Under the pieces are notes generated by a model. It had not been told where the DNA came from. It did no database searches and worked only from the letters and a program-made list of their open reading frames with translations. A DNA stretch of 64,000 bases from Macrostomum hystrix (Eukaryota > Animalia > Platyhelminthes), in assembly GCA_950097015.1 (NCBI GenBank), contig CATNEN010000005.1, positions 1,364,001-1,428,000 of the forward strand. The letters are read 5' to 3'. Positions 1,577 to 62,493 of this stretch are shown here, in pieces. The translations under genes were made by a program, and so were the position numbers. Position 1 is the stretch's first letter. Every line of letters begins with the position of its first letter.

Positions 1577-4500
1577 TCAACCCGGCACATATCGATCAAC
1601 CGGCATCCGCCTCCGCACCGGGTAGCGCCTCTGGGGCAGCTCGTCCGCAGCGTCTCCGCCGCCGTGCAGCTCGTGCGCGAAGGGCGGCTGCTCGAAACGC
1701 TCGACGTCGGGTGCCGGCAGGAACAGCGGCCGAACGCGGTTTACGTTCACTCTGCGCGTCTTGCCATTCTTGCCGATCTCGACCACCAGATTGCGCTGGG
1801 ACAGCACCCGCCAGCCGGGGTCCCAATACGGCGCCAGCTTGGAGCCCCTCAGCTCGATGCGCAGCAGCACCTCGTCGCCCTGGCCGAATCTGCGCAGCTG
1901 CCCGGCTGACCTGTTGTAGTCGCTCTGCTGCTCGCCAGCCGCCTGCACCAGGTGCTCCTCGACAAGGGTCACGCCCGGTGAAGACCTTCAGCGGTGGCAG
2001 TCGCGTTGAGCAGTGCACTCGCGAGTTGTAGGACAGCAGGATCAGCGGCAGCTTGTCCTCCCACTCGCTCTCTCGCTCGGTGAAGCACCTGAGTAGTTGC
2101 AGCACGGACTTGTTTCCCGACTCGGCCAGTCCGTTTCCTTTCGGATTGTACGCTGTGGTTCTTGTCTTGGTGACTCCCAGACCGCGCAGAGTGTCTTGAA
2201 AGAGCTGGCTCTCGAAATTCGGGCCTTGGTCCGAGTGGATGACTCGAAGCAGTCCAGCCTGGGAGCAGATTGAAAGGAAGGCGCGAGCCGTAGTCTGGGC
2301 CGTCTGGTCTGGTAACGCTACAGCCGTCAGGTACTTGGAAAATTGGTCCTGAGCTACCAGCAGGTAATGGTTGCCGCGTGATGATGGTGCCACCTTGAAG
2401 ATGTCGATGGCCACCGAGTCCCATGGCGATCCGATAGGCAGCTCTCCGAGTGGCGCCTTGGGCTGCGAGCCTGCCTTCTTCTCCTGGCAGACGGCGCAGC
2501 TCTGGCAGTGCTGCAGGACATCCTCAGCCATGCCCGGCCAGTAGGCAGTCAGCTTGAGCGTGCGGTAGCATTTCTCGGCACCGAAGTGGCCTCCCAGACC
2601 TTCGTGAGCGTCTGCTAGGAACTGGTGTCGTAGAAATGCCGGCACCACTGGAACTTCCCTCAGTCCGTCCAGGTCGTTGAACTTGCGGGAGAGAACTCCG
2701 TCATCATTCAGCTTCAGCTTCCTCCAGATTCTGCTCAGCTGCTGCAGCGGTCCTGAACGCCATCTTGGAGGCACGTCTGGCTCGTTGACGATCGCTTGAA
2801 TCACCTGACTAAGCTCTGGATCTTGCCGCTGAGCAGTTTTGAGCTCTTCCGAGCCGATTTCTGCTGTCAGTTGAGTCGCTGCAATTTCCGGGGCGTGCAG
2901 CCTGGACAGCGCGTCGGCATCAGAATTCTCCACACCTCTGCGGTACTTGACGGTGAAGTCGAACTCTTGGAGCAGCAGCCGCCAGCGACCCAGCCTACCA
3001 TAGCTATCGATTCTCTGGGAATCGATGTAGGTGAGCGGGCAGTGATCCGTGTGCACCGTGAAATGCTTGCCAAGCAAGTAATGCCGGAAGACTTTGAAAG
3101 CGTGCAGGATGGCCAGACACTCCTTCTCTGTTGCCGAGTACTTTTTCTCCGCCGAGTTGAACGCCCTGCTCGAAAACTCGATCACTGCATCGCCTTGCTT
3201 CAGGATTGCACCGACCCCACTGCCGCTGGCATCCGTGAAGACAGCGAACTCCTTGGAAAAGTCCGGGTTCACCAGGATCGGAGGACTCATCAGGCAGATC
3301 TTGAGCTCGTCGAAGGCAGCTTGGCACTCTGCAGTCCACTCAAACGCCACGCCCTTGCCAGTCAGGTGGTGAAGTGGTGCAGCGATGGCAGCGAAGTTGG
3401 CGACATGGCGGCGGTACTGGTTGCACAGGCCGATAAACTGGCGGATCTCCTTGACTGACCTCGGCTCCTTCCACTGCTGAATCGCTTCCAGCTTCTCTTT
3501 GCTTGGCTGAGCTCCCTCCTTTGAATAGCGCATGCCGAGGAAAGTCACTTCAGGCACCGCGATCTTGCACTTGGAGCCTCTCAGTGTCAGTCCGGCTGCT
3601 CGGACACGCTGAAGTGCCTCTCGCAGTTGCAGCAGATGCTCCTTCCTGGTCTTTGAGAAGCACAGGCTGTCATCGAAAAACGTGAAGACGAAGTCACAGC
3701 CATTGAAAACTTTGGACATAAGCATGCAGAACGTGCTGGGGCCACCTGACAGGCCTTGAGGCATTCTCTTAAATTGGTATAGCGGCATCCCTGGTCCAGG
3801 GCTAAAGGCCGTCTTCTGTCTGTCTTCTTCAGCCAGAGGGATCTGAAAGTAACCTCCATTGAGATCCAGCACTGAGAACACCGTGCTGCCCGCTATTCGA
3901 TCTCGTGCCTCCTCCATTAGCGGAATTCCTTGCGCCGACCGAATCGTCTTCTTGTTGAGCTCTCTGTAGTCGATGGTCAGCCGCAGACTGCCGTCCTTCT
4001 TGGTCACGTACACCGGTGGAGCCACGTACGGACTCTCGCTCAGTTCGATCACGTCGTTCTCCAGCAGCTCCTGAATCAGCAGCTCCGCCTTCTCCCGGTA
4101 GTGCACGGGCATTCGGCGCGGTGGGACACGAACTGGCACCTCATCAGCGAGAACAATTCGATGCTGCTGGAGGTGCGTAAGTCCCGGCTTCTTCTTGAAC
4201 ACGTCCTTGAACTCCATCAGCAGTCGCTGAACTTCGGGGTCATCGGTGGTTGGCAGCTCAAAATCCACGCAGCTGAACTCGGGCACAAGAGCATCCTCGA
4301 TGTCAACTTGGTCGTCCGTCTCACTCTGGAACCTTGCACTGCAGATACGACCAGCAGCTGCAGGGTTGGCCTTGAAGTCCAGCTGCAAACGGTGCTTGCC
4401 GATGAAGTCGATCCCGACGATGACAGGACAAACCAAATCGGACACCACGTAGAACAAATGCAGCGCTGTCACTTTCCCGACTGTGAGCGGCAACTCGATC

Positions 4501-4811
4501 TGCCACTCGATGCTGATTGGCTGCTTGTTCACCGAGTGCAGCTGCACTCCGGCTGAAGTTGCGCGGCTGAGCTGCGATTTCGTCAGAATGCTGGAGTCGA
4601 CCAGTGAGCACTGGCTGCCGGTGTCTAAAAGCGCCTTTACACTTCTACCATCAAGCTTGCACTCAAACTGCGAAAGTCGGTCGGGCGTAACGCTGCATCC
4701 ACTGAAGACCCCGCCGACTGCGAGCGCTGGCCCCGGAACCTGCGCTGGTGAACCCGCAGTTACTGCTGGCCGAGGTGGCGGGCCCGCCCACCCCAGCCTC
4801 TGGCGTTTCCC
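1577..4811 (-). CDS. pol: Pol (protease, RT, RNase H, integrase) in the -1 frame; integrase C-terminus disrupted near 1965
   Basis: The frame is open from the slippery site through LLDTGS (4617-4628), RT (LDLNGGYFQI, MPQGL, FFDD), RH (VFTDAS, TDHCPL) and IN (HEGLGGH...CQSC, AID, HSDQG). The true IN tail (KLAPYW...RRYPVRRR) is in another frame, 1972-1577. Confidence 0.93.
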
Positions 4812-45300: not shown

Positions 45301-48300
45301 GTGGCAAGAATGGTGATGATAGTTTGTAAATTTGTAATTTATATTTGCGATGACAGAATTGGGCAGGATCTAACTTAGCCTTCTCAAAATCGAAAATGGG
45401 ATAATTTCTTTAAAGAAAGATTATATAGTCTTTATAGGTAGTTCTTACTAATTCTTATGGTGTACGGCATGGAATTGTAATTATAAGATGTGTAAGACAG
45501 GTACTATTTTGAACAGACAGGGTGTTGCAAATGCTTAGATTAACCTAGATTTTAGTAAAGTCGTCAGAATATTAAATTAAGTACCTTTGCACATAATAGA
45601 TTCTGCTATATGTTACAAAAGCATATTAGGAAAAAGATAGTATTTTACGAGTATGAGCAAAATAATACTAGACGAGGCTGAGAAAGAATCCGATACAATG
45701 TTCCAACTCTCTTTGATGTATCAATCGGGAAAATTAGTTCCAGAAATGCGACAACGTGTGAGTCGGAATGAAATTGCTTATCTTTAATAACTCACAAAGT
45801 TTTTTGGCTGCAAAAACACTTGGGAATATTCCTTCTTGCTAGTCCGTAGAAGCTGGCTCAGCGGGTAGAGAATCTCGCCCATCCAGTCGAAACCGATCGT
45901 GTCCTCGTCCAGAACTGAAATCCTGATTTTTTAGGGGGGGGGGCATCTCGTTGACGACTGAATTTTGAGTTTCTGAGATCAAATCTTTTGCTGCACGCAT
46001 TATATCTTTCAGGCTATTTGAACTTTTTTAATGTCGTGCATAAGCTACTTGGCTGACGCCTGGCAAGACTAAAGTTTCTGGCGGGCTTCAGGCAAATTAT
46101 ATTCGATCTGTGGAAACTCGTGTCTAGTTTTTCAATCAATTTTTGTCAGTAAAAAATAAAACTCGAATAAGCACGTACTTGTTTCGAACTCTAATTCTTG
46201 CTGTCTATTGCCTTTTTACCTATCCTGCAATTATTCACCTAACACCGACGTTCTCACCTCGTTATCCATAATGCACAAAACACCAAAAAAATTCCTTCCC
46301 CCTTTGTACACCTTTGGACACCCCCCACGCCAAACCTGATTCAGAGGAGTTTCTAAAAATAGAATTACAGCGAGCATTTCGTCCGCCCTCTCGGCACCCA
46401 CCTCACGCCCCACACATTCTATTGTAGATTTTCTAAAAGTAGAACCACGCCGAGTATATCCTCTTTTATTCTTAACTGATCCTCGAAAGGACATCGAGTA
46501 TGTATTCGATATGAATTATCGAAAAACTCGAATAGGAATAAAGATTGCTGGGGCTTCGATTATATATAGCTACATCAAAAGCTAGGAAATTAACTTAAAC
46601 CTGAGCATTTTGGAGTCAATATCAGCTTTCGTAACGCCGCTGTAGCAGAACTCCTCGTCCCATAAGGGATTCAACGTGCGGTGGCAGGTGCGAGAGCGCA
46701 TCTTTGTTCGCTTCCCAGTGTCCGGCAGCAGGTGCATCTTCACGTACGGATCGGAGAGGCCGTTGTGATCGTGAGCTCTCAGATTGTCACCCTTAATGAT
46801 GCGAATATATAGGGCCGCTTTGCCAGGAATGTACTGCAGCACAAAGTGCAACGTGCCCAGGCCCCGGTCTTCAAAGTAAGCGGCTGGGCTGGATGTTTCA
46901 TACTGCTGCTGCTGCAAGCCAGTCGGGCCTTGTACAGCTGGACTTCGCTCGGGTGTAGCGGTTGCTTTTGGAAGGAGCAAGGAGGGGTTTAAAGTAACGA
47001 TACAAAGCAGCAGGTTCAATTATATATTTCTTAGATGAACCCTTACCTCCGTATTTGACGCTTGCTTTCGCTCCTGCAGACAATCCATTGCTCTCGCTAT
47101 CATGCTTGGCGTCTGCAATGAAAAAAGTCGTGATGAAACTGATTTGTAATTTGTTATGCGAAATCGCTTTCGATTATAATTTTAATTTTTTATCTAACGA
47201 GCGCAGTGATCAGAGGGTGGAGGACAACGACCTCGATTCTAAAAATAGAATTTTTATTTCTGTGTATTCCTGCAAACACCCACCTCACGCCAAGATCTTA
47301 AAAATAGAATTCTCTCCAGTCTTCCTGTTGAAAGCCACCTCACGCCACGTTTCTAAAAATAGAATTCTTTTTCCACGCTTCATTCCTATACCTTCTTAGG
47401 CTTTCTTAACTATAAAAGTGTACCACTTCAATGTATTTGAAACGTAAATCGATGCAATGCGACGCGACGCAATTACGAGCGTAACCTTTCAACGGCACAC
47501 TGTCTTTAGCGTCGCCGCGGCCTCCAGCGACATCTTCATCCGCCTCTGAGTCTTCGTTTTCGTGCAAGGCGTCGCCGCTTTTGCTGGCGTGGCTGCGCCT
47601 TCGGCCAGGCAGAGCTTCGGGACAGCAGCAGAGAAGGTTGCGCAGGGAATTCATGCGGGAGAGTCTCGTTATTAGCTTGTTATAGTGCAAACTGACTTCG
47701 CAGCAGCCGCGTTTTTTATGAGCTAGCTGAGCTAGTCTGATATTTGAGGCTAACTATGCCCTGTTGTAGCATCAAGGCTATTATGTGGATGGATTTCTAT
47801 AACCATCTTTATGGGAACTGCTTAACACAGGCGGTCCTATAGCAGGCTTGGGAGCCCCAACCCGCACTGTCGTGTGTCCATTCAGCTGAAGCCAATCGTA
47901 GAGGCCATTGCGACTGCCAACCCCCTCCCAAACAGCCATCCCAATGGAAGTTTTCAGTTTCACCCCCAGCATTCACAATCATTTATTTGTCGTTTTCCCA
48001 ATCTATATAGAGATTACTGTGCGATAATGCTGGTTTAAATGCGCCCATTCGTGTAGCTAGCACTGACAATTGGGATCAGGGTCACGGGCCGGGATAGAAA
48101 TATTTGTTTAAACTGACACACACACACACACACACAGCTCTTCCTCTTCTCAGTCCACAGTTTCCCAGGTTAATCAAACCCGGTCCACTTCACGAATGAG
48201 CTCTCAGTTGAGCTTTTTTTATCTATCCGAGGTTTATTGTATTTTTCTTGGCCTATTTTGGGTGTACTATTGAGCTGGGGAGGGAGAATGAGTCGAAAGA

Positions 48301-51300
48301 TTCGTGGAAAAATATTCCCAGATAATCCCATTTTGTGGGATTTAAGCAGGTGTGCTCGAAAAGCAGGAAGCCATCATTCTCAAGGTCTAGCGAGTGTTTC
48401 CTGTTCACAGATGCAGTGGTTTAGATCCAAACCAAATGCTTGAATCTAGCTATTCAGAATGCTTACCAAATCATGACCTAATAAAAATTGCTTACTTCAC
48501 TCACTCCTTCACTCACTCACTCACTCACTCACTCACTCACTCACTCACTCACTCACTCACTCACTCACTCACTCACTCACTCATTCACTCACTCACTCAT
48601 TCACTCACTCACTCACTCACTCACTCACTCACTCACTCACTCACTCACTCACTCACTCATTCACTCACTCACTCACTCACTCACTCACTCACTCACTCAC
48701 TCACTCACTCACTCACTCACTCACTCATTCACTCACTCACTCACTCACTCACTCACTCACTCACTCACTCACTCACTCACTCACTCACTCACTCACTCAC
48801 TCACTCACTCACTCACTCACTCACTCACTCACTCACTCACTCACCTACTAACTTACTTACTTACATACGTAGATATTTACTGAACTTACTACTTATTCAC
48901 TTACCTTAACATTAGTTTTTGTTGTCGATTTTAGCATTTTTAGCCAAAAATTAACGGCGTTAGACATAAATTTTTTTTCTAGAAAATACACATTACGAGC
49001 TCGTATCTAAGCTCGTAAAGTTTTATTTGAACAGATTTTGCAACCCACCCCAATTATGAAGACTGTCTCATGCTGCGTTTATTCTTTGGTCTTCATTAGA
49101 AACGTTGCAAAGGCTAGGCTAATCTAACAGTATACAGCAGATAAGTATTCACCGCCATTGTGCAACTGAGTTAGTCTAGTGCAATAAAAAATGCGCATGA
49201 GCACAGAAGGTAGATAAATGGTAAGTGGAAAACTCAGCCCAGTTTTTCCCATGAGAGTTATTGCCCCGACTGACTACCGCCATCGAAAAAGTACACAGTA
49301 AAGATGGCAATTATGGCGCGTAGTCTTGTGGTGAATTCTTTGCTGTACTTTTCTTATAATTAGCCGAACTCGTAGCAATTAGAGTCACTTTTACTCGTAG
49401 AATCGTAGCAAGGTTCGAAGATACAGTCAAGAAAGTTTCAAAGCATGAGCTACGAGTGTTTATCGGGCATGTTTTGATATATCGTTTTTCGATAACTTTA
49501 AAAAATGGTGACTAACATCATCTCTGCTTACTGCAAGTAGTGCAATTTGGCTTTCGACGATAAGTTATTATAGAAATGCAATCCAACGAACCTGAATAAG
49601 TAGTACGAGGATCCGTTTCAGCGTCCGTTTCAGATTCGGTGTCAACTCTGTCCTCATCTTCATCAGTGGAATCTCTTGCGTATGGCAACCGATTGTAGAA
49701 CCATCCTCCAGACTTTTTCCAAAGCTGAAATGTTTTATTTTGTGTTTTACTTGTTTAGACTGCACTAGGCGTATTGCAGGTTGCTGACTTTAGTATTACT
49801 CCCCTTTACTATCTCTAACGATAAGAGGATTAAAAAAATATTACTTCGAGGACTTCGCCGGTAAAAAAAGGCTGCTTATTTTAGTGAGCTAGCAGATTAG
49901 CCAGCCTAATCCTTCGATTGAGATATTTTAAAAAGGAATAATTCCTCAACACTACGTGCATATAGCTAAGTAAAGAGGCAAGCTATATCAACGTTGCTAC
50001 TAAATTTACTATCAGGACACTTCACTGCGGTGCAGAATACTGCATGTTTCTAAAAATAGATACACACAACCCCACCCCATAGTTTTCTACCCCCACGACG
50101 CCCACCTCACTTCCCTAGTCCTTCAGTGTTTCTAAAAATAGCTATTTGTGGTGTATTTTTTATCTTTCGCATTTTTTATCCTTTGAGGCAACCAACGACG
50201 CATCAGACTAAAAAACATCGCGTCTATCATATTCAGTACCTGAAGTTCCTTATGGCAGATTTTACATTCCCAGTCGTCATCTGATTTTGTATTTAAATAA
50301 CTAGCCAGTGAACTAGTCGCTTCATTGCTTCGAAGTTGCTGCCGATAATGTGGTCTAGTTCCGCATTTTTTACAAGTTGCCTGTCGTGGACAAGTTGATC
50401 AAATGACTTTCATGTATACCTTTTTAGTGTCTTCATGCACGAGGAGTTTCGTAAGGCGTACTCACCAGTCCACAGATGCGACACGCCATGCTGCAGTTGT
50501 TTTTTCCTATCAGGTTCTTCAGCGATCGTAGCAACAAACCGGTGGTTAATCTGTCGCCGCAAAGAAGGCAAAATTGTCGACCATCTCCAATAGCCATTGA
50601 TTTCAAAGCGTTTAACTTTGAAATATAGTGCCTTTGATGGTAATAGTTTATAAATGAGGCATGATTGGGACAGTAAATTAGGTAAGAGCAAAAGGAAACG
50701 ATGCGGGAGGGGGAAATTAGAAGAGAGGATGAACGGGGAAAGAGGAAGTGAGATAAAAGAAGAAGACAAATGAGACTAAATAAATAAGGGAGACGAGGGA
50801 AGAGGGAGATGAGAGAGATGAGGGAGATGAGGGAGAGAAAGAAAGGGAAGGAGAGGAAGTAGAGGAGGGAGAGGAGGGAGATCAGGGAGAGGAAGTAGAG
50901 AAGGGAGAGGAGGGAGATCAGGGAGAGGAAGTAGAGGAGGGAGAGGAGGGAGATCAGGGAGAGGAAGTAGAGGAGGGAGAGGAGGGAGATCAGGGAGAGG
51001 AAGTAGAGGAGGGAGAGGAGGGTGATCAGGGAGAGGAAGTAGAGGAGGGAGAGGAGGGAGATCAGGGAGAGGAAGTAGAGGAGGGAGAGGAGGGTGATCA
51101 GGGAGAGGAAGTAGAGGAGGGAGAGGAGGGAGATCAGGGAGAGGAAGTAGAGGAGGGAGAGGAGGGAGATCAGGGAGAGGAAGTAGAGGAGGGAGAGGAG
51201 GGAGATCAGGGAGAGGAAGTAGAGGAGGGAGAGGAGGGAGATCAGGGAGAGGAAGTAGAGGAGGGAGAGGAGGGAGATCAGGGAGAGGAAGGAGAGGAGG

Positions 51301-54300
51301 GAGAGGAAGGAGAGGAAGGAGAGGAGGGAGAGGAGGGAGATCAGGGAGAGGAAGGAGAGGAGGGAGAGGAAGGAGAGGAAGGAGAGGAAGGAGAGGAAGG
51401 AGAGGAAGGAGATCAGGGAGATCAGGGAGATCAGGGAGATCAGGGAAAGTAAGGAGAGGAAGGAGAGGAGGGAGAAGAGAGAGAGGAGGGAGAGGAAATG
51501 AAAAAGGAACCATACCCAAGTCGAAGGAAAGTAGAGTCACATTACCATAAGGCGAGTGTTCTGTTAGAGACGTAGTGCATTTAATCCTTCATTTAGCTCG
51601 AAAACCGTTGCACTGATATAATAAATGATCCCGTAAGTCATCTCAACTAGTGATTAAACTAAGCCAAGCAGTGGCGAGAAGGGGGAATGTGGTATCGGTT
51701 GATGCGGTCCGTTTTGGTAGAATTCACACAGCTATAGGGAGATCCGGTATCAGAACAAACAGACACACGCCAGGATAATATCTGACAGGCGCTTGATGGA
51801 GGTGCGTCAATCAGATGAAGGCGGGTTATTGCTACTTGTGTCGAAAATTTCTTTTGAATAGGATCAAGTGGGAATGACAATCGCTACCGTCGTGTTGTTT
51901 TCAAAGGATATCTTATTTTTCTGGGCAATTTCCCCCCCCCCCACTCAGAAATAGAAGGCGGAGGCTTCTGTGAATCAGGCGACAAAAAATAGTTTTTTTT
52001 GCAAAAGAATGTTTTTTAAAAGTCAGGAACAGTTTTTGTCTATTTAAATAGAAGCTTTTGTGTCTGGCTTTCACTCAATGATGGCTCTAATTTAGATTTA
52101 AGCGTTCTTTTAAAAACCTGAAGCATTTTGCTCCAAAACGGAAAGTGGATAATCGCCTTGTAGGGCTGTTTTAGCTAAAGGACTTCAAATTCTTACTTAT
52201 TTTCGGCCTAAACTGAGATGCCTGATGGGGCGCCTTTCTGCTTGGTTAAGGAGTGACTGATGGGGAGTGACTGATGGAGAGTGACTGATGGGGAGTGACT
52301 GATGGGGAGTGACTGATGGGTAGTGACTGATGGAGAGTGACTGATGGGGTGTGATTGATGGGAGTGACTGATGGGTAGTGACTGATGGAGAGTGACTGAT
52401 GGGTAGTGACTGATGGAGAGTGACTGATGGGGAGTGACTGATTGGGAGTGACTGATGGAGAGTGACTGATGGGGAGTGACTGATGGGGAGTGACTGATGG
52501 GTAGTGACTGATGGGGAGTGACTGATGGGGTGTGACTGATGGGTAGTGACTGATTGGGAGTGACTGATGGGAGTGACTGATGGGAGTGACTGATGGGGAG
52601 TGGTGATGGGGAGTGACTGATGGGGAGTGACTGATGGGGAGTGACTGATGGGGAGTGACTGATGGGGAGTGACTGATGGGGAGTGACTGATGGGAGTGAC
52701 TGATGGGGAGTGACTGATGGGGAGTGACTGATGGGTAGTGACTGATGGGTAGTGACTGATGGGTAGTGACTGATGGGGAGTGACTGATGGGAGTGACTGA
52801 TGGGAGTGACTGATGGGGAGTGACTGATGGGGAGTGACTGATGGGGAGTGACTGATGGGAGTGACTGATCGGAGTGACTGATGGGGAGTGACTGATGGGG
52901 AGTGGTGATGGGGAGTGACTGATGGAGAGTGACTGATGGGGTGTGACTGATGGGAGTGACTGATGGGAGTGACTGATGGGGAGTGACTGATGGGGAGTGA
53001 CTGATAGGGAGTGACTGAAGTATAGTAAGCAGATCCTGTTTTACAAAGGAGGCCAGCAGACGGAATTGCAAGCAGGCGCTCACAAACCGCACTTTGAGTC
53101 GGCAGAGCAGAAAACAACAAAGAGAATTTGCTCCCCTAGTAGTATCAGCAACTGCAACCGAGGGTTACCAACCTGATTCTTCCATTTTCAACAGCCAGTA
53201 GGCGCTCATTGTCCCGCAGCACACTGTTGATTGTCAACAGCTCCTGATTTGCAGTCTGTTCTGGAACTCGGCCCTCAGCAGCGGCTGTGTATCGATTAGC
53301 GGCACTTGACCAACCTTTTCGTATTCTAAAACGTTATTTTTATAGACTGGCTTCGTTAAAATTGAGTGCTTTGTGTAACCAGCACCTAATAAGTTAACAA
53401 CAAGAACCTGTAGGTTCTGCTAAGAAGCTATAGAAAATTTGGCCTACTATAGTATGTACTGGGTGAGTTGCAGAGAAAGTCTACTAGAAATGGCTGATTA
53501 ATTGAAGTCTCCGCATGTGATCAATACCATTGCGCTGTTGTGGTTCTGTGTTACTGCTGTGTACACTTGTTAGACTAATAAATAGCATCAGTTGGAAGAA
53601 AGCTATCATTTTGGAAAATAGTTGCATCAGTTATATAAGTTAGATACTTCAAGACACGAATACTTGTTAGACAAGAATACTTGTTAGACAAGAAGACTTG
53701 TTACAAAAAAGACTTGTTAGAAAAAATACATGTTAGACAGGAAGGAACATCTGTTAGACAGGAAGGAACATCTGTTAGACAGGAATGAATATCTGTTAGA
53801 CAGGTAGGAACATCTGTTACACGTGTAGGAACATCTGTTAGACAGGAATGAATATTTGTTAGACAGGAAGCAACATCTGTTAGACAGGATGGAACATCTG
53901 TTAGACAGGAAGCGAAATCTGTTAGACAGGAAGCAACATCTGTTAGACAGGATGGAACATCTGTTAGACAGGAATGAATATCTGTTAGACAGGAAGCAAC
54001 ATATGTTAGACAGGTAGGAACATCTGTTAGACAGGTAGGAACATCTGTTAGACAGGAATGGAAAACCTGTTAGACAGGAATGAATATCTGTTAGACAGGT
54101 AGGAACATCTGTTAGACAGGTAGGAACATCTGTTAGACAGGAAGGAACACCTGTTAGACAAGTAGGAACATCTGTTAGACAGGTTCTCTACCTGTTAGAC
54201 AGGTAGGAACATCTGTGAGACAGGTAGGAACATCTGTTAGACAGGTAGGAACATCTGTTAGACAGGTAGGAACATCTGTTAGACAGGTTCTCTACCTGTT

Positions 54301-57109
54301 AGACAGGTAGGAACACCTGTTAGACAGGTAGGAACATCTGTTAGACAGGTAGGAACATCTGTTAGACAGGATGGAACATCTGTTAGACAGGAAGCAACAT
54401 ATATTAGACAGGTAGGAACATCTGTTAGACAGGTAGGAACATCTGTTAGACAGGAATGGAAAACCTGTTAGACAGGAATGAATATCTGTTAGACAGGTAG
54501 GAACATCTGTTAGACAGGTAGGAACATCTGTTAGACAGGAAGGAACACCTGTTAGACAAGTAGGAACATCTGTTAGACAGGTTCTCTACCTGTTAGACAG
54601 GTAGGAACATCTGTTAGACAGGTAGGAACATCTGTTAGACAGGTAGGAACATCTGTTAGACAGGTAGGAACATCTGTTAGACAGGTTCTCTACCTGTTAG
54701 ACAGGTAGGAACATCTGTTAGACAGGTAGGAACATCTGTTAGACAGGTAGGAACATCTGTTAGACAGGTAGGAACATCTGTTAGACAGGTTCTCTACCTG
54801 TTAGACAGGTAGGAACATCTGTTAGACAGGTAGGAACATCTGTTAGACAGGTAGGAACATCTGTTAGACAGGTAGGAACATCTGTTAGACAGGTAGGAAC
54901 ATCTGTTAGACAGGTAGGAACATCTGTTAGACAGGAAGGAACACCTGTTAGACAAGTAGGAACATCTGTTAGACAGGTTCTCTACCTGTTAGACATCTGT
55001 TAGACAGGTAGGAACATCTGTTAGACAGGTAGGAACATCTGTTAGACAGGTAGGAACATCTGTTAGACAGGTAGGAACATCTGTTAGACAGGTAGGAACA
55101 TCTGTTAGACAGGTTCTCTACCTGTTAGACAGGTAGGAACACCTGTTAGACAGGTAGGAACATCTGTTAGACAGGTAGGAACATCTGTTAGACAGGTAGG
55201 AACATCTGTTAGACAGGTAGGAACATCTGTTAGACAGGTAGGAACATCTGTTAGATAGGTAGGAACATCTGTTAGACAGGTAGGAACATCTGTTAGACAG
55301 GTTCTCTACCTGTTAGACAGGTAGGAACACCTGTTAGACAGGTAGGAACATCTGTTAGACAGGTAGGAACATCTGTTAGACAGGTAGGAACATCTGTTAG
55401 ACAGGTAGGAACATCTTTTAGACAGGTAGGAACATCTGTTAGACAGGTTCTCTACCTGTTAGACAGGTAGGAACATCTGTTAGACAGGTAGGAACATCTG
55501 TTAGACAGGTAGGAACATCTGTTAGACAGGTTCTCTACCTGTTAGACAGGTAGGAACATCTGTTAGACAAGAAGGAACATCCGATAGACTGTTATCGAAA
55601 AGGAACAATATGCCTATCATGCTTGAATGGAAAACTGTGTCAAGAAACTTAAGCACGCGAAAAGCCGTACCCTGTTCGCACAAGTGCGAACTTTTCGCTA
55701 AGTTGAGTGCTATTGCTAATGATATTTGCTTTTTTGCGTTAAAAGTCGAATTTCGACCGAGAAAGTGAGAGCCACCGAAAATTAGAAATCGTTTTCTTTT
55801 CACAAGCAAAAGAATAAAAAAACCGATGATGCAGACAAGATACGCTTGTTAAGCTATTCTATTAGGTGCGATTCGAATCGAAACTTAAAACCTTTGTAAA
55901 GTGCAAGTCTAACAGGTTCTATATCTGTTAGACAGGTTCTCTAACTGTTAGACAGGTTCTTGACCTGTTAGATAGGTTCTCTATCTGTTAGATAGGTTCT
56001 TGACCTGTTGGACAGGTTCTCTATCTGTCAGACAGGTTCTCTATCTGTCAGACAGGTTCTCTATCCGTCAGACAGGTTCTCTATTCTGTCAGACAGGTTC
56101 TCTATTCTGTCAGACAGGTTCTCTATCTGTCAGACAGGTTCTCTATCTGTCAGACAGGTTCTCTATCTGTCAGACAGGTTCTCTATCTGTCAGACAGGTT
56201 CTCTATCTGTCAGACAGGTTCTCTATCTGTCAGACAGGTTCTCTACCTGTTAGACAGGTTCTTGACTTGTTAGACAGGTTCTCTATCTGTCAGACAGGTT
56301 CTCTATCTGTCAGACAGGTTCTCTGTCTGTCAGACAGGTTCTCTATCTGTCAGACAGGTTCTCTACCTGTTAGACAGGTTCTCTAATTGTTAGACAGGTT
56401 CTCTAGTTGTTAGACAGGTTCTCTACCTGTTAGACAGGTTCTCTATCTGTTAGACAGGTTCTCTACCTGTTAGACAGGTTCTCTACCTGTTAGACAGGTT
56501 CTCTAGTTGTTAGACAGGTTCTCTAGTTGTTAGACAGGTTCTCTAGTTGTTAGACAGGTTCTCTAGTTGTTAGACAGGTTCTCTAGTTGTTAGACAGGTT
56601 CTCTAGTTGTTAGACAGGTTCTCTAGTTGTTAGACAGGTTCTCTAGTTGTTAGACAGGTTCTCTAGTTGTTAGACAGGTTCTCTAGTTGTTAGACAGGTT
56701 CTCTAGTTGTTAGACAGGTTCTCTAGTTGTTAGAAAGGTTCTCTAGTTGTTAGACAGGTGCCCTTTCATGCATTTATCCTCAATGCCAATTGTTGTTTTC
56801 ACATAATCATCAGAGTGTGCTAAATTGGCTACATCAATTTTTCGCAAAGCACAAAACGCGAAACACAATGTGTATTGTTAATGGACCGTTTTGCATTCAG
56901 GTTTGCTAGTTTTTTTCCAGAATGCGACGATATTTTTAAATTGAAATTTGCACAGCTACCTAGCGAATTAACTGGTCTTTTGTGTCTAAGCAAGGTTTCC
57001 TCAGAGAAAAACAATGGAATAATGATGCAGTAACGATGCGGTTGTTAAGCACTCACTTGGAACGAAGGCACAACTGTCTGTCGGATGGGCAGGGCCAATG
57101 ATTCCACAT
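39323..57109 (-). CDS. RPH3A: Rabphilin (Rab3/Rab27 effector): Rab-binding domain with 4 CxxC, linker, C2A, C2B; about 541 aa in 12 exons
   Basis: Exons 57109-57057 ([14 protein letters not shown]), 53325-53173 (IRKGWS...ENGRIR), 50631-50466 ([10 protein letters not shown]...CRIC), 50380-50240 (CKKC...WECKIC), 49724-49592 ([10 protein letters not shown]), 47073-47047, 46964-46601, 45922-45796, 45085-44925, 44842-44761, 40408-40312 and 39444-39323. Total 1626 nt, phases consistent. Both C2 domains keep the acidic Ca2+ ligands. Confidence 0.93.
39460..40160. repeat. Compound minisatellite (GTTATTGGGAGTGACAGATATAGGGGGTGACA)
   Basis: Fills the last rabphilin intron. Confidence 0.88.
40440..44690. 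repeat. 20-bp minisatellite (GAGTGACAGAATTGAATAAA), about 4.2 kb
   Basis: Fills a C2B intron of rabphilin; carries a 968-bp higher-order duplication. Confidence 0.96.
47486..47654 (-). CDS. RPH3A: Putative alternative first coding exon of rabphilin ([13 protein letters not shown]...)
   Basis: ATG at 47654; phase-1 donor AAAG|GTTACG at 47486/47485 fits the phase-1 exon at 47073; no phase-1 acceptor upstream in this frame. Confidence 0.6.
48499..48870. repeat. (TCAC)n microsatellite ending in (TTAC)n
   Basis: About 85 units in rabphilin intron 5. Confidence 0.96.
50780..51500. repeat. 36-bp purine-rich minisatellite
   Basis: ATCAGGGAGAGGAAGTAGAGGAGGGAGAGGAGGGAG units. Confidence 0.9.
52253..53018. 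repeat. 14-15-bp minisatellite (GGGGAGTGACTGAT)
   Basis: Tandem units in rabphilin intron 2. Confidence 0.92.
53690..55570. repeat. 21-bp minisatellite (CTGTTAGACAGGTAGGAACAT)
   Basis: Tandem units in rabphilin intron 1. Confidence 0.93.
55905..56760. repeat. 20-bp minisatellite (CTGTYAGACAGGTTCTCTAY)
   Basis: Tandem units in rabphilin intron 1. Confidence 0.93.
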
Positions 57110-57774
57110 CTTCCTATCTCTCTCTCTCGTGTTTTTTACGTCCGAATTGTCTGCTTCTGCAGTGGGGTCTAGAAAATTGCTTTTCCGTCTTGTCTTGTCA
57201 AGGGCCGATTCAGTCAGCGAAGTCGTTTATCAAGTCGTTTCAGGAAATTTGCTGCTACTTATTACTTATTTTTTTCCGTCGACTCGCTTGTACGAGCCGT
57301 AGTTCTATGATTTCCTCTAGTGGAAAAGCATATTGCCTTCTAGACTCAGAAGCGGTATTTGGCGATAAGAAGAAGTGCCTAGATAAGCTGGTTCGTACAC
57401 TCACCCAATAAGTTGGTCAGTAAGGAGCTCAGTAAAGATTCGGTTTTGTCACAATTGCCATACGGTGAATCTACCCTGAAATTGTACAATAGAATAATAA
57501 TTATTATTTACTAGGCTGTCGCGTGAAATATTTTCATCTGTACATCGGCATCGTCTGGTTATCAGTAGAAATACAACTAACTGGGGAAACACCACGGGGT
57601 ATTTCAAATACCCACTGCCTAATACTTCACGATGGCTTCCAAACTGGATGACCGATTTTTTTTAAAAGTCCATAATAATAATTAATTATTTATTACACCT
57701 GCCCCAATCGGGCCAGATGTGCAGCCGACAGCACAGCCGCAGCTATTGCGCGGCGCATCTGAAGGCTGAAGGTA

Positions 57775-57976
57775 TTCGTACGGCTGTTCAGTCCATGGAC
57801 TGGGGGGACGCTCCACCCACCTCCAATTATCCCAGCTGATGCTGGTACCAGCTGGGTGAACTGAAGCAAAGCAGAGTTAAGTGTCTTGCTAAAGGACACA
57901 AATTGTTCCAGTGGAGTCGGGAATCGAACCCCCGACCTTGAAGTCGTGAGTCCGGCGCTCTAACCACTCGGCTCTA
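57775..57976 (-). mobile_element. tRNA-derived SINE copy 2
   Basis: Minus strand GCCGAGTGGTTAGAGCG (box A), GGTTCGATTCCC (box B), GTGTCCTTTAGCAAGACACTTAAC...CACCCAGCTG core, CAGTCCATGGACTG palindrome. Confidence 0.8.
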
Positions 57977-57983
57977 ACCACTG

Positions 57984-58290
57984 TACCTGTTAGACACTTT
58001 CTATACCTGTTAGACACTTTCTATACCTGTTAGACACTTTCTATACCTGTTAGACACTTTCTATACCTGTTAGACACTTCCTATACCTGTTAGACACTTT
58101 CTATACCTGTTAGACACTTCCTATACCTGTTAGACACTTTCTATACCTGTTAGACACTTTCTATACCCGTAAGACAGCTTCTATACCTGTTAGACAGGTT
58201 CTCTACCAGTTAGTCAGCTTCTATACCTGTTAGACAGGTTCTCTACCAGTTAGACAGATTCTATACCAGTTACACAGGTTCTCGACCTGT
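57984..58290. repeat. 20-bp minisatellite (CTGTTAGACACTTTCTATAC)
   Basis: Lies between rabphilin and the neuropeptide gene. Confidence 0.9.
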
Positions 58291-58535
58291 TCCTGTTAGT
58301 TTCATGTTCTATTCCTGTTGGAGGCCATTAACTCAAGTATCAGCCCGAAGGACTCAATTGATGACCTTGACGATTAACTATTAATTTTTCAGTTCCACAG
58401 CTGTAGGGTATTTAGAATTCGCTGAAAAAAGCAAAGCAACAAAGCCAGGAACAATAGCCAACTATAACAATATAACAATAGTCAACTCCACTTGGCTGAG
58501 TTGAAATCAAAGGCCTAGAGTTCGCCAACTCTGAG

Positions 58536-58594
58536 CCAATCACCGATAAAATGCGTGTTCTATAATCTTAGTGACACTCGTCTCATCTTATTGG
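58536..58594. promoter_or_regulatory. Candidate promoter: opposed CCAAT (58536) and ATTGG (58590) boxes flanking TATAAT (58561)
   Basis: Motifs lie about 100-150 bp upstream of a putative non-coding exon (58688-58776) of the neuropeptide gene. Confidence 0.35.
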
Positions 58595-59097
58595 CTATAG
58601 CGGAGACCCGTTTGGGCATAGACTCAAGGACGGCTATATTGTTAGTCTCTGAGCAGATTATTCTATCCCTCTTTGCTGCTCTCACAGGTGCTGGTTCTGT
58701 ATCATTGGCTTCTGGGAAAACGAGCTAATTACATATATTTGCATCGCTGCTTCCGATTTCAAGTCGTTCAGAAAAGGTGAGTTGTGAAGAATTGAGCAGT
58801 GCCAATAGTATGCGAGTATATTATTTGACATAGATAATTATAAGTAGCTGTTGATAGTTTCATCAAGTCAGAATTACATCTCACCTAGATATTATCTCTA
58901 GTTGAGATTGGCCAGGATACTGTGTCTTTCAGAAAGCAAATTGCAAGTTAGATAATGCGGGGGAAATTTTGCAATACAAAATGAACACTTTTTTAGTGTC
59001 AGAGAACAAATTTTTCATTTAAAAGCTCGATTTTTTGCAGACAAAACTACGCGGAAAACGAAACAGACGAGAGACTTGGCCCTAACAGGTAGAAAAC

Positions 59098-59724
59098 ATG
59101 AGGACAACGATAATTTCATTGTGGCTGCTGTTAGTCACCATGCTGATTGCTTGCTGGAGCACCTCTGCTTTTGGTCAAGACGAGAAAATAGGTAAACATC
59201 AATAATAAACATGTTTGTCATTTTTTCTAAGCATTTTTAAAACAATGAGCGATTATACTTTGTCTAACATATTTGCATGAATAGGAACCGATGTTCAATA
59301 CGCTGAAGCGGTCCTGCCAAACGACTGGGATTCTGGGATCGAATCTGTAGTTCCGAGTGGATTCGGAAAGCGAGGCTACGCCAGATTCGGAAAACGCGGC
59401 TACGCCAGATTCGGAAAACGCGGCTACGCCAGATTCGGAAAACGCGGCTACGCCAGATTCGGAAAACGCGGCTACGCCAGATTCGGAAAGCGAGGCTACG
59501 CCAGATTCGGAAAACGCGGCTACGCCAGATTCGGAAAGCGAGGCTACGCCAGATTCGGAAAGCGAGGCTACGCCAGATTCGGAAAACGCGGCTACGCCAG
59601 ATTCGGAAAGCGAGGCTACGCCAGATTCGGAAAACGCGGCTACGCCAGATTCGGAAAACGTGATTCGGAAATGCCTGCCAACGAAGAGGCGCTGATGATT
59701 GACATTCCAAGTTACATTGTTTAA
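59098..59724 (+). CDS. FMRFamide-like neuropeptide precursor, 12 x GYARFamide (177 aa, 2 coding exons)
   Basis: Exon 59098-59191 encodes signal peptide MRTTIISLWLLLVTMLIACWSTSAFG; GT-AG intron 59192-59284; exon 59285-59724 encodes ...SGFGKR(GYARFGKR)x12 DSEMP...SYIV*. Confidence 0.95.
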
Positions 59725-60029
59725 GACTCTTAAAGGCAGTGGACTATGAATGGCTTTTCCTATACGCATAATGGTCAGTTTAGTATCAAGCAAATCAGTC
59801 GCTAATTAAAATAAAAAAACGAACGGGCTGCACGCCTTTGACAATGGCCTGCTATGAGCTGTCGCAACATGCCAGTAAGGGCTCTCTTGTTGTATTTCTT
59901 AGAAATTTCTGAGCATCTTGATGTTTTGATTGAATGTATGAGCATGCATGATTAATGATAACCTTACATGAGGATCTGAATGTAAGTTTAGGATATTCCG
60001 ATCTGGGGATCTAAACTTGATTAGAAGGA

Positions 60030-62165
60030 TAATCCTATCTAGGCAATTACAAGTAGATTTGAGAAGGCGATAATCCTATCTGGAAATCTGAATTTGAGTA
60101 GGGGATAATCCTATCTGAGGATCTAGATTTGAGAAGGCGATAATCCTATCTGGGGATCTAGATTTGAGAAGGCGATAATCCTATCTGAGGATCTAGATTT
60201 GAGTAGGGGATAATCCTATCTGGTGATCTAGATTTGAGAAGAGAATAATCCTATCTGGGGATCTAGATTTGAGCAGGGGATAGTCCTATCTGGAAATCTG
60301 AATTTGAGTAGGGGATAATCCTATCTGAGGATCTAGATTTGAGAAGGCGATAATCCTATCTGGGGATCTAGATTTGAGAAGGCGATAATCCTATCTGAGG
60401 ATCTAGATTTGAGTAGGGGATAATCCTATCTGGTGATCTAGATTTGAGAAGAGAATAATCCTATCTGGGGATCTAGATTTGAGCAGGGGATAGTCCTATC
60501 TGGGGATCTGGATTTGAGAATGGGATAATCCTATCTGAGGATCTAGATTTGAGTAGAGGATAATCCTATCTGGGGATCTGGATTTGAGAAGGCGATAATC
60601 CTATCTGGGGATCTAGATTTGAGTAGAGGATAATCCTATCTGGGGATCTAGATTTGAGAAGGCGATAATCCTATCTGGGGATCTAGATTTGAGCAGGAGA
60701 TAATCCTATCTGAGGATCTAGATTTGAGTAGGGGATAATCCAATCTGGGGATCTAGATTTGAGCAGGGGATAACCCTATCTGGGGATCAAGATTTGAGAA
60801 GGCGATAATCCTATCTGGGGATCTAGATTTGAGTAGGGGATAATCCTATCTGGGGATCTAGATTTGAGAAGAGAATAATCCTATCTGGGGATCTAGATTT
60901 GAGTAGGGGATAATCCTATCTGGGGATCTGGATTTGAGCACGGGATAACCCTATTTGAGGATCTAGATTTGAGTAGGGGATAATCCTATCTGGGGATCTA
61001 GATTTGAGTAGGGGATAATCCTATCTAGGGATCTAGATTTGAGAAGAGAATAATCCTATCTGGGGATCTAGATTTGAGCAGGGGATAGTCCTATCTGGGG
61101 ATCTGGATTTGAGTAGGGGATAACCCTATTTGAGGATCTAGATTTGAGAATGGGATAATCCTATCTGAGGATCTAGATTTGAGTAGGGGATAATCCTATC
61201 TGGGGATCTAGAATTGAGCAGGGGATAACCCTATCTGGGGATCTAGATTTGAGTAGGGGATAATCCTATCTGGGGATCTAGATTTGAGAAGGTGATAATC
61301 CTATCTGGGGATCTAGATTTGAGCAGGGGATAATCCTATCTGGGGATCTAGATTTGAGCAGAGGATAGTCCTATCTGGGGATCTAGATTTGAGAATGGGA
61401 TAATCCTATCTGGGAATCAAGATTTGAGTAGGGGATAATCCAATCTGGGGATCTAGATTTGAGCAGGGGATAACCCTATCTGGGGATCAAGATTTGAGAA
61501 GGCGATAATCCTATCTGGGGATCTAGATTTGAGTAGGGGATAATCCTATCTGGGGATCTAGATTTGAGAAGAGAATAATCCTATCTGGGGATCTAGATTT
61601 GAGTAGGGGATAATCCTATCTGGGGATCTGGATTTGAGCACGGGATAACCCTATTTGAGGATCTAGATTTGAGTAGGGGATAATCCTATCTGGGGATCTA
61701 GATTTGAGTAGGGGATAATCCTATCTAGGGATCTAGATTTGAGAAGAGAATAATCCTATCTGGGGATCTAGATTTGAGCAGGGGATAGTCCTATCTGGGG
61801 ATCTGGATTTGAGTAGGGGATAACCCTATTTGAGGATCTAGATTTGAGAATGGGATAATCCTATCTGAGGATCTAGATTTGAGTAGGGGATAATCCTATC
61901 TGGGGATCTAGAATTGAGCAGGGGATAACCCTATCTGGGGATCTAGATTTGAGTAGGGGATAATCCTATCTGGGGATCTAGATTTGAGAAGGTGATAATC
62001 CTATCTGGGGATCTAGATTTGAGCAGGGGATAATCCTATCTGGGGATCTAGATTTGAGCAGAGGATAGTCCTATCTGGGGATCTAGATTTGAGAATGGGA
62101 TAATCCTATCTGGGAATCAAGATTTGAGCAGGGTATAATCCTATTTGGGGATCAAGATTTGAGAA
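60030..62165. repeat. 35-bp minisatellite (GATCTAGATTTGAGTAGGGGATAATCCTATCTGGG)
   Basis: About 60 units with a 700-bp higher-order duplication. Confidence 0.94.
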
Positions 62166-62493
62166 GGGGTTGTCTGCACTATTACACTATTGAAACAGTG
62201 AAAAAGTCAGCTATATTTTTCGCTGTCGGTAGCGCATTAAAGACACGGGGAAAAGTTGTCATATTGACGCTAACATGCACCTGCTGCCTCTCACAATTCA
62301 ATCGATAAAATGGGGGAATACTTTTTCAGGGTACGGAATTTCTTTTCCATCTATGAGCTATCACTACTCAAGGAATTATCATTTATCCTATCACTTAAGC
62401 AAGAAAATGATAGATACCTTATACAAACTATAAACCTTCTATAATAGCAATAATTACAGTAAGTAATAACTAAACGAGTATAAATAATATAAT

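What the first reader, a model, noticed from the sequence alone, without database searches (positions are those of the whole stretch)
59098..59724. Hidden neuropeptide precursor encoding 12 identical GYARFamide peptides, disguised as a minisatellite
Seen: the 24-bp tandem array at 59374-59661 reads GYARF-GKR twelve times in a frame the ORF track does not list. It is joined by a 93-nt GT-AG intron to an upstream signal-peptide exon, giving 534 nt in frame. Variation between units is only synonymous (AAA CGC versus AAG CGA, order AAAABABBABAA), unlike the neighbouring non-coding arrays. Established: Gly-Lys-Arg is the convertase and amidation signal, and GYIRFamide/YIRFamide are known flatworm FMRFamide-like myoactive peptides. 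Inference: GYARFamide is an Ile-to-Ala variant, and a 13th site could release an ...VVPSGFamide peptide. I cannot verify whether this peptide has been described.
Basis: partly seen in the sequence, partly recalled or inferred. Interest (0 to 1): 0.82.

Follow-up and report, generated by a model that had tools for sequence, protein, structure and literature searches.

The report
Flatworm GYARF-amide neuropeptide precursor gene
The 24-base "minisatellite" is the coding core of a small two-exon flatworm gene for a secreted FMRFamide-like neuropeptide precursor that should release twelve copies of GYARF-amide. It is a new member of a well-known family, and its Macrostomum lignano counterpart is already in UniProt.

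Summary
ATG 59098 opens a 94-nt signal-peptide exon. A 93-nt GT-AG intron (59192-59284) joins it in frame to an exon holding 12 perfect GYARF-GKR units (59374-59661), with stop at 59722-59724. Only two columns of the 24-nt unit vary; both are third codon positions.

The array occurs once in the 220-Mb genome. That genome matches the published Macrostomum hystrix assembly in size and contig count.

Two M. lignano UniProt models, A0A1I8JRL5 ("FMRFamide-related neuropeptides") and A0A1I8IXZ7, carry a homologous signal peptide followed by many GYARFGKR/GYTRFGKR units. The M. lignano 24-nt unit, rebuilt from its three translated frames, differs from the window's at two third codon positions only, while the flanks have diverged strongly. 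So this is a conserved FMRFamide-like (FLP) precursor gene, not a chance ORF.

I found no paper naming GYARFamide or YARFamide, but McVeigh 2009 could not be read. The "13th" ...PSGF-amide site is a decayed edge unit and is not conserved in M. lignano.

The spliced protein was never joined or searched as one sequence.

The scan has already found several similar multi-copy neuropeptide genes elsewhere in this genome. Verdict: real gene, new member of a known kind, modest interest.

The parts
59098..59191 (+). Exon 1 (94 nt): start codon and signal peptide, MRTTIISLWLLLVTMLIACWSTSAFG|QDEKI plus the first base of a Gly codon
   Evidence: Translation. It has an n-region Arg, a 12-aa window with Kyte-Doolittle mean 2.69, and small residues at -3/-1 (AFG|Q). 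It is homologous to the signal peptide of M. lignano P0001, E=5e-5.
59192..59284 (+). Phase-1 GT-AG intron, 93 nt, 75% A+T, with a CTAAC branch-point motif at 59264-59268
   Evidence: Unspliced read-through stops at 59205.
59285..59724 (+). Exon 2 coding part: acidic spacer, 12 peptide units, acidic C-terminal tail, TAA stop at 59722-59724
   Evidence: Translation. BLASTP against P0001 gives E=3e-23.
59359..59373 (+). Decayed 5' edge unit GGATTCGGAAAGCGA (G-F-G-K-R).
   Evidence: The M. lignano spacer ends ...DTLDKR without Gly.
59374..59661 (+). Twelve 24-nt units, each GGC TAC GCC AGA TTC GGA AAR CGN = GYARF-G-KR. Predicted product: 12 x GYARF-NH2.
   Evidence: Unique in the genome. The unit is 22/24 nt identical to the reconstructed M. 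lignano unit, with all differences at third codon positions.
59662..59721 (+). C-terminal acidic tail DSEMPANEEALMIDIPSYIV (net charge -5). Its first 10 nt (GATTCGGAAA, 59662-59671) are a partial repeat unit read out of phase.
59805..59815 (+). Overlapping ATTAAA/AATAAA poly(A) signals, 81-86 nt after the stop codon
   Evidence: Sequence motif only; the transcript end was not observed.

Best explanation
This is a functional, single-copy, two-exon gene of a Macrostomum flatworm, most likely M. hystrix, encoding a 177-codon prepropeptide of the FMRFamide-like peptide (FLP) class.

Shown here: the gene structure, the unit sequence, its uniqueness in the genome and its conservation in M. lignano.

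Inferred from established neuropeptide biochemistry:
- Signal peptidase cuts near AFG|Q.
- Prohormone convertases cut after each Lys-Arg.
- Carboxypeptidase E-type trimming removes the basic residues.
- Peptidylglycine alpha-amidating monooxygenase turns the exposed Gly into a C-terminal amide.
- The result is 12 identical GYARF-NH2 pentapeptides ([M+H]+ 612.325), an acidic N-terminal spacer and an acidic C-terminal tail.

Inferred by analogy with GYIRFamide/YIRFamide in other flatworms: the peptide is released from neurons and acts through a G-protein-coupled receptor, probably as a myoexcitatory or modulatory signal.

Inferred on array history: the array is kept uniform by unequal crossing-over or gene conversion together with purifying selection on the peptide.
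For: - The reading frame, splice sites, 12 units and third-position-only variation are all present as described.
- Exon 1 has signal-peptide features and is homologous to the signal peptide of M. lignano A0A1I8JRL5.
- That protein, and A0A1I8IXZ7, follow the signal peptide with GYARFGKR/GYTRFGKR copies. UniProt names the first 'FMRFamide-related neuropeptides'.
- The two exons align colinearly and adjacently on P0001, with exon 2 starting at a shared 'TD'.
- The M. lignano 24-nt unit reconstructs uniquely from its three translated frames. It differs from the window's units at 2 of 24 positions, both synonymous third positions. By contrast, the signal peptide is only 36% identical and the spacer cannot be aligned. 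This is the pattern expected when selection acts on the mature peptide.
- The array is unique in the genome, unlike the neighbouring satellites.
- More distant hits that share the xxRFGKR repeat are named FMRFamide-type precursors of a nemertean and a nematode.
- The language-model look-alikes are all multi-copy amidated neuropeptide precursors, though all score below 0.9.
- Flatworm FLPs, their myoexcitatory action and their GPCR/PKC/calcium-channel route are documented in PMC2919380. The YIRFamide gene spp-11 is reported in PMC2953531.
Against:
- Signal-peptide prediction was heuristic only; no SignalP was available.
- Pfam FARP (PF01581) did not match at E<=1. It is a very short model, so this is weak.
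- Within the array, the synonymous-only pattern rests on about 3 linked mutations.
- Both M. lignano models are frameshifted, and one is fused to a retrotransposon, so they are imperfect comparators.
- No peptide has been detected, and no receptor is known.
Confidence: 0.85

Rival explanations
1. A non-coding minisatellite that happens to be open in one frame next to a chance signal-peptide-like ORF. There is no gene.
For: The window is packed with minisatellites of period 19-35. All three forward frames of the array are open. The array's overall homogeneity (94% matches) is no greater than that of one neighbouring array. No RNA evidence was obtained.
Against: The period is a multiple of 3. 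The unit encodes the canonical RF-Gly-Lys-Arg motif. The array is unique in 220 Mb. The same peptide unit and a homologous signal peptide occur together in M. lignano proteins. All within-species and between-species differences in the unit fall on synonymous third positions.
Confidence: 0.03
2. A real gene, but with a different transcript structure from the reader's model, for example another first exon, trans-splicing to the 59285 acceptor, or an additional upstream exon.
For: The splice was not observed directly. Macrostomum genes are often SL trans-spliced (the section headings of PMC10468722 list SL trans-spliced genes). The M. lignano model P0005 joins the signal peptide to the array differently from P0001.
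Against: Exon 1 is homologous to the signal peptide of the M. lignano orthologue and lies 93 nt upstream with consensus GT, CTAAC and AG signals in the correct phase. The two exons abut on P0001 in the alignment. Without exon 1 the product would have no signal peptide.
Confidence: 0.08
3. A secreted repetitive protein or peptide of non-neuronal use, for example a gland secretion or a defence peptide, or a recently inactivated gene, rather than a neuropeptide.
For: Tissue expression and processing are untested. Several top statistical hits to the repeat are unrelated low-complexity proteins.
Against: The dibasic cleavage site plus Gly amidation signal flanking a 5-residue x-x-x-R-F core, repeated between acidic spacers after a signal peptide, is the defining layout of FLP precursors. 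The peptide differs by one residue from GYIRFamide, a neuronal flatworm peptide (PMC2919380). The ORF, splice signals and all 12 units are intact.
Confidence: 0.05

Closest known systems
Macrostomum lignano A0A1I8JRL5 ('FMRFamide-related neuropeptides') and A0A1I8IXZ7 (UniProt/UniRef gene models)
   Same: Both have a homologous signal peptide, then an acidic spacer, then tandem GY[A/T]RFG[K/R]R units and a short acidic tail. The 24-nt unit is 22/24 identical at the DNA level. They are almost certainly orthologues or co-orthologues.
   Different: Overall BLASTP identity to A0A1I8JRL5 is 49% over the repeats. The signal peptide is 36% identical and the spacer cannot be aligned. The M. lignano models also contain GYTRF units. 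They are frameshifted inside the array, and one is fused to a retrotransposon RT/RNase H. The window's gene is clean, with 12 identical peptides.
Flatworm (G/R)YIRFamide peptides and the planarian YIRFamide gene spp-11 (Collins et al. 2010, PMC2953531; Novozhilova et al. 2010, PMC2919380)
   Same: A pentapeptide G-Y-x-R-F-NH2 from a flatworm. Multi-copy precursor logic. Expected GPCR-mediated myoexcitation.
   Different: Position 3 is Ala (Thr in some M. lignano copies) instead of Ile. Orthology to spp-11 was not tested because no reference sequence was in hand. No Y-I-R-F-G-K-R coding pattern exists anywhere in this genome.
YMRFamide/FMRFamide precursor of Macrostomum (M. lignano Mlig001796.g3, cited in PMC9234716) and its counterpart in this genome at G000:C7:11247782-11248330
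   Same: It is the second Y-x-RFamide multi-copy precursor in the same genome. It also has GKR/GR processing sites and acidic spacers.
   Different: Tetrapeptide YMRF without the N-terminal Gly. Units are interleaved with spacers rather than forming a perfect head-to-tail array. Different chromosome piece. No detectable similarity outside the RFG(K/R) motif.
Classical multi-copy FMRFamide precursors of other spiralians and nematode FLPs (e.g. Lineus longissimus XP_064635473.1, Ditylenchus destructor KAI1723125.1)
   Same: Tandem xxRF-G-K-R units after a signal peptide. They were retrieved by the repeat in a full HMMER scan.
   Different: Similarity is confined to the RFGKR motif. The N-terminal peptide residues and the flanks are unrelated. 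Pfam FARP did not score.

Membership tests
FMRFamide-like peptide (FLP / RFamide) precursor | N-terminal signal peptide directing the precursor into the secretory pathway | tested here: met
   Exon 1 has an n-region Arg, a 16-residue hydrophobic core (Kyte-Doolittle mean 2.69) and AFG|Q at -3/-1. It is homologous to the M. lignano orthologue's signal peptide. The test was heuristic; SignalP was not available.
FMRFamide-like peptide (FLP / RFamide) precursor | One or more peptides ending in Arg-Phe, followed by Gly (amide donor) and basic cleavage sites | tested here: met
   There are 12 copies of KR|GYARF-G-KR.
FMRFamide-like peptide (FLP / RFamide) precursor | Sequence-profile match to Pfam FARP (PF01581) | tested here: inconclusive
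   No Pfam family scored at E<=1. The model is very short, and the named M. lignano orthologue P0001 does not score either.
FMRFamide-like peptide (FLP / RFamide) precursor | Transcribed and spliced mRNA; neuronal expression | not tested
Neuronal expression cannot be tested with these tools.
FMRFamide-like peptide (FLP / RFamide) precursor | Mature amidated peptide detectable and bioactive | not testable with these tools
   Needs LC-MS/MS ([M+H]+ 612.325) and muscle or GPCR assays.
Flatworm (G)YIRFamide family (spp-11 type) | Core Tyr-Ile-Arg-Phe-NH2, optionally N-terminally extended by Gly or Arg | tested here: not met
   The core is Tyr-Ala-Arg-Phe. No YIRFGKR coding pattern occurs in the genome. 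The peptide works like a GYIRFamide in layout but is not that peptide.
Flatworm (G)YIRFamide family (spp-11 type) | Orthology of the precursor to planarian or schistosome YIRFamide genes | not tested
   No spp-11 sequence was available by reference. Among the best 150 full-scan hits, only the two M. lignano models had a GY-x-RF-type unit; the only other Y-x-RFG hit was a nemertean YMRF precursor.
Macrostomum GYARF/GYTRF precursor (A0A1I8JRL5 lineage) | Homologous signal peptide plus a GY[A/T]RFG[K/R]R array in one protein | tested here: met

The most novel reading that the evidence does not exclude
GYARF-amide is a Macrostomum-lineage ligand that has replaced the otherwise conserved flatworm (G)YIRF-amide. 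This genome has no YIRF-coding gene by pattern; it has only GYARF and YMRF genes. From memory of Day et al. 1997 (not read here), alanine substitution of Ile in YIRFamide strongly reduced activity on schistosome muscle. If that holds, the natural Ile-to-Ala/Thr change would imply co-evolution of a receptor with altered selectivity. That would give a natural ligand-receptor pair for mapping FLP-GPCR specificity in flatworms.
Probability: 0.25. Interest if true: 0.45.

Novelty: new member of a known kind. Interest (0 to 1): 0.3.

Why it matters
FLPs are the main myoexcitatory peptides of flatworms, and their receptors are candidate anthelmintic targets. A clean, single-copy 12 x GYARF-amide gene sits in a non-polyploid Macrostomum genome, in a genus where transgenesis methods exist for M. 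lignano. It gives a tractable handle on how position 3 of the G-Y-x-R-F-amide core (Ile, Met, Ala, Thr) affects receptor selectivity. It also corrects two frameshifted or chimeric M. lignano models in UniProt. Beyond that it is an ordinary neuropeptide gene. It also shows that coding tandem arrays can be told from neighbouring satellites by three features: a period divisible by 3, uniqueness in the genome, and variation only at third codon positions.

Tried and rejected
- The spliced protein was deliberately never joined. Each exon was searched by reference only, so SignalP-like and whole-protein searches on the joined sequence were left out.
- The look-up of encoding contigs for P0001 and P0005 found nothing on record, so the M. 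lignano intron position could not be compared.
- McVeigh et al. 2009 (PMC2749192), the likeliest place for a prior Macrostomum FLP listing, is not held.
- Full-text searches for GYARFamide, YARFamide, YARFGKR, YARFGRR, YARF-NH2, YTRFamide and YTRFGKR gave no true hit. The 'gyarf' hits are Hungarian surnames. Supplements are not indexed.
- Pfam gave nothing.
- BLASTP of the exon-2 spacer alone against the P0001 spacer gave no alignment.
- The bacterial promoter/terminator scan, tRNA scan and Rfam scan of the surroundings were uninformative.
- Fixed-phase column counts for three neighbouring arrays (55000, 55912, 63432) are unreliable because of phase slips and are not used.
- The ORFs on the minus strand across the array (188 and 148 aa) are repeat read-throughs with no start or secretion signal and were rejected.

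Full report
**1. The observation**

- ATG 59098 sits in a good Kozak context. It opens a 31-codon stretch, MRTTIISLWLLLVTMLIACWSTSAFGQDEKI, that ends at a consensus donor (ATAG|GTAAAC, GT at 59192-59193).
- Read without splicing, it stops at 59205.
- The 93-nt interval 59192-59284 is 75% A+T. It carries a CTAAC branch-point motif at 59264-59268 and ends in AATAG.
- From 59285 the frame (phase 1) reads G-TDVQYAEAVLPNDWDSGIESVVPSGF-GKR, then twelve GYARF-GKR units, then DSEMPANEEALMIDIPSYIV and TAA.
- Tandem Repeats Finder reports the array as period 24, 12.5 copies, 94% matches.
- My own slicing gives 12 units at 59374-59661 in three DNA versions (AAACGC, AAGCGA and a final AAACGT), in the order AAAABABBABAA. 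Only columns 21 and 24 vary, and both are third codon positions.
- ATTAAA and AATAAA signals lie 81-86 nt after the stop.
- The spliced coding length is 94 + 440 = 534 nt.

**2. Is it more than chance?**

The window is full of minisatellites (periods 19, 20, 21 and 35), and all three forward frames of the 24-nt array are open. An open frame alone therefore proves nothing. The within-array argument from synonymous-only variation is also weaker than it looks. The two variable sites are completely linked, so there are only about three independent mutations. With 17 of 72 possible single changes synonymous, the rough chance that all three are silent is about 0.013.

Three other facts settle the question.
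- The array and its 5' flank are single-copy in the 220-Mb genome. The 35-bp array immediately downstream has diverged relatives on four other contigs. A 300-bp element 1.1 kb upstream has thousands of copies.
- The unit encodes the canonical prohormone motif: Arg-Phe, then Gly as amide donor, then Lys-Arg as convertase site.
- The gene is conserved in another species (section 3).

**3. Relatives**

The word-indexed search with exon 2 found one protein. It is Macrostomum lignano A0A1I8JRL5, which UniProt names 'FMRFamide-related neuropeptides'.

The exhaustive HMMER scan of 1.8 billion representatives added M. lignano A0A1I8IXZ7 (95% identity over the best stretch). This model has the same signal peptide, at least ten GYARFGKR units and an artefactual fusion to a retrotransposon RT/RNase H.

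Among the best 150 hits, only these two carry a GY-x-RF unit. The only other Y-x-RFG hit is a nemertean YMRF precursor. The other hits with xxRFGKR repeats are named FMRFamide-type precursors of a nemertean and a nematode, or unnamed metagenomic proteins. The rest are unrelated low-complexity proteins.

The splice model gets indirect support from these relatives.
- Exon 1 by itself aligns to the signal peptide of A0A1I8JRL5 (E=5e-5, 36% identity).
- In a three-way alignment the two exons lie colinearly and adjacently on that protein. Exon 2 starts at a shared Thr-Asp just after the ...AQED that matches ...GQDE of exon 1.
- So one protein in the sister species contains both parts in the order the splice predicts.

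Both M. lignano models are frameshifted inside the array and show the same unit in all three frames (GYARFGKR, ATPDSGSA, LRQIREAR). Only one 24-nt sequence satisfies all three. It differs from the window's units at two positions, and both are synonymous third positions. The spacer between signal peptide and array cannot be aligned at all. A strongly conserved mature-peptide unit inside fast-evolving pro-regions is the normal signature of a neuropeptide precursor under selection.

**4. Organism**

G000 has 220,453,370 bases in 42 contigs. The published Macrostomum hystrix assembly is described as about 220 Mb in 42 contigs (PMC10468722). Together with the M. lignano best hits, this makes M. hystrix the likely source; that is an inference. 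Earlier notes of this scan also call the genome a Macrostomum flatworm and report several other multi-copy neuropeptide genes in it. That assembly has an RNA-seq-based annotation, so the gene is 'hidden' only from a prokaryote-style ORF list.

**5. How it most likely works**

Shown here:
- the gene structure;
- signal-peptide features: Arg in the n-region, a 16-residue hydrophobic core, and AFG|Q, which parallels SLA|Q in M. lignano;
- twelve KR-flanked GYARFG units;
- acidic spacer and tail, each with net charge -5.

Inferred from general prohormone biochemistry: convertase cleavage after Lys-Arg, removal of the basic residues, and amidation of the Gly-extended peptide. This would give 12 x GYARF-NH2 ([M+H]+ 612.325).

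Inferred by analogy with GYIRFamide/YIRFamide: neuronal release and action on a GPCR coupled through PKC to voltage-operated calcium channels in muscle (PMC2919380).

It has no counterpart in M. lignano, whose spacer ends ...TLDKR. I regard it as a spacer that may happen to be amidated. The first 10 nt of the C-terminal tail are likewise a partial unit read out of phase.

**6. Comparison with what is known**

The peptide is one residue away from GYIRFamide of triclads. Position 3 is Ala here, Ala or Thr in M. lignano, Ile in triclads and Met in the YMRFamide peptides.

This genome has no Y-I-R-F-G-K-R coding pattern. It does have a second Y-x-RFamide gene on contig C7, with about 12 YMRFG(KR/RS) units. 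That gene corresponds to the M. lignano FMRFa/YMRFa propeptide cited in PMC9234716.

The window's gene meets the defining features of an FLP precursor that could be tested. It does not carry the YIRF core, and orthology to planarian spp-11 (PMC2953531) was not tested.

**7. Novelty**

No paper in the searchable library contains GYARFamide, YARFamide, YARFGKR or related strings. Supplements are not indexed, and McVeigh et al. 2009 could not be read. The orthologous M. lignano protein is already in UniProt under an FMRFamide-related name. This is therefore a new member, and a clean reference copy, of a known kind.

**8. Limits**

- All searches were done exon by exon by reference, and no whole-precursor search or signal-peptide predictor was run on a joined sequence.

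Noticed in passing
G000:C7:11247782-11248330 (+), = L017:1283-1831: A second Y-x-RFamide precursor in the same genome, with about 12 copies of YMRFG(KR/RS) separated by acidic spacers. The ORF has no ATG at its start, so a 5' signal-peptide exon probably lies upstream. It is likely the counterpart of the M. lignano FMRFa/YMRFa propeptide Mlig001796.g3 cited in PMC9234716.
   Followed up: partly
window 57680-58291: A dispersed repeat of about 300 bp (57680-57983) has more than 3000 first-look candidates in the genome, and the scored copies are about 90% identical. It is followed directly by a 20-bp minisatellite (57984-58291). It looks like a SINE-like element with a satellite tail, 1.1 kb upstream of the neuropeptide gene. 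No tRNA or Rfam match was found.
   Followed up: partly
window 59991-62169: A 35-bp minisatellite (62 copies) starts 267 nt after the stop codon. Arrays 67-72% identical occur on contigs C39, C34, C3 and C38, so it belongs to a dispersed satellite family, unlike the coding 24-bp array.
   Followed up: partly
P0001 and P0005 (M. lignano UniProt A0A1I8JRL5, A0A1I8IXZ7): Both public M. lignano models are frameshifted inside the repeat; the same 24-nt unit appears in all three frames. A0A1I8IXZ7 is also fused to a retrotransposon RT/RNase H and is named after that. The true M. lignano precursor probably has many more GYARF/GYTRF copies than either model shows.
   Followed up: partly
window about 47486-59191: According to earlier notes of this scan, a rabphilin-like gene lies on the minus strand head-to-head with the neuropeptide gene. 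I did not verify the position of its first exon. ORFs in 56760-57990 were uninformative.
   Followed up: no
window 1596-4547 (-): A 983-aa open frame lies in the most GC-rich part of the window (53% GC). It may be a transposable-element protein. I did not examine it.
   Followed up: no
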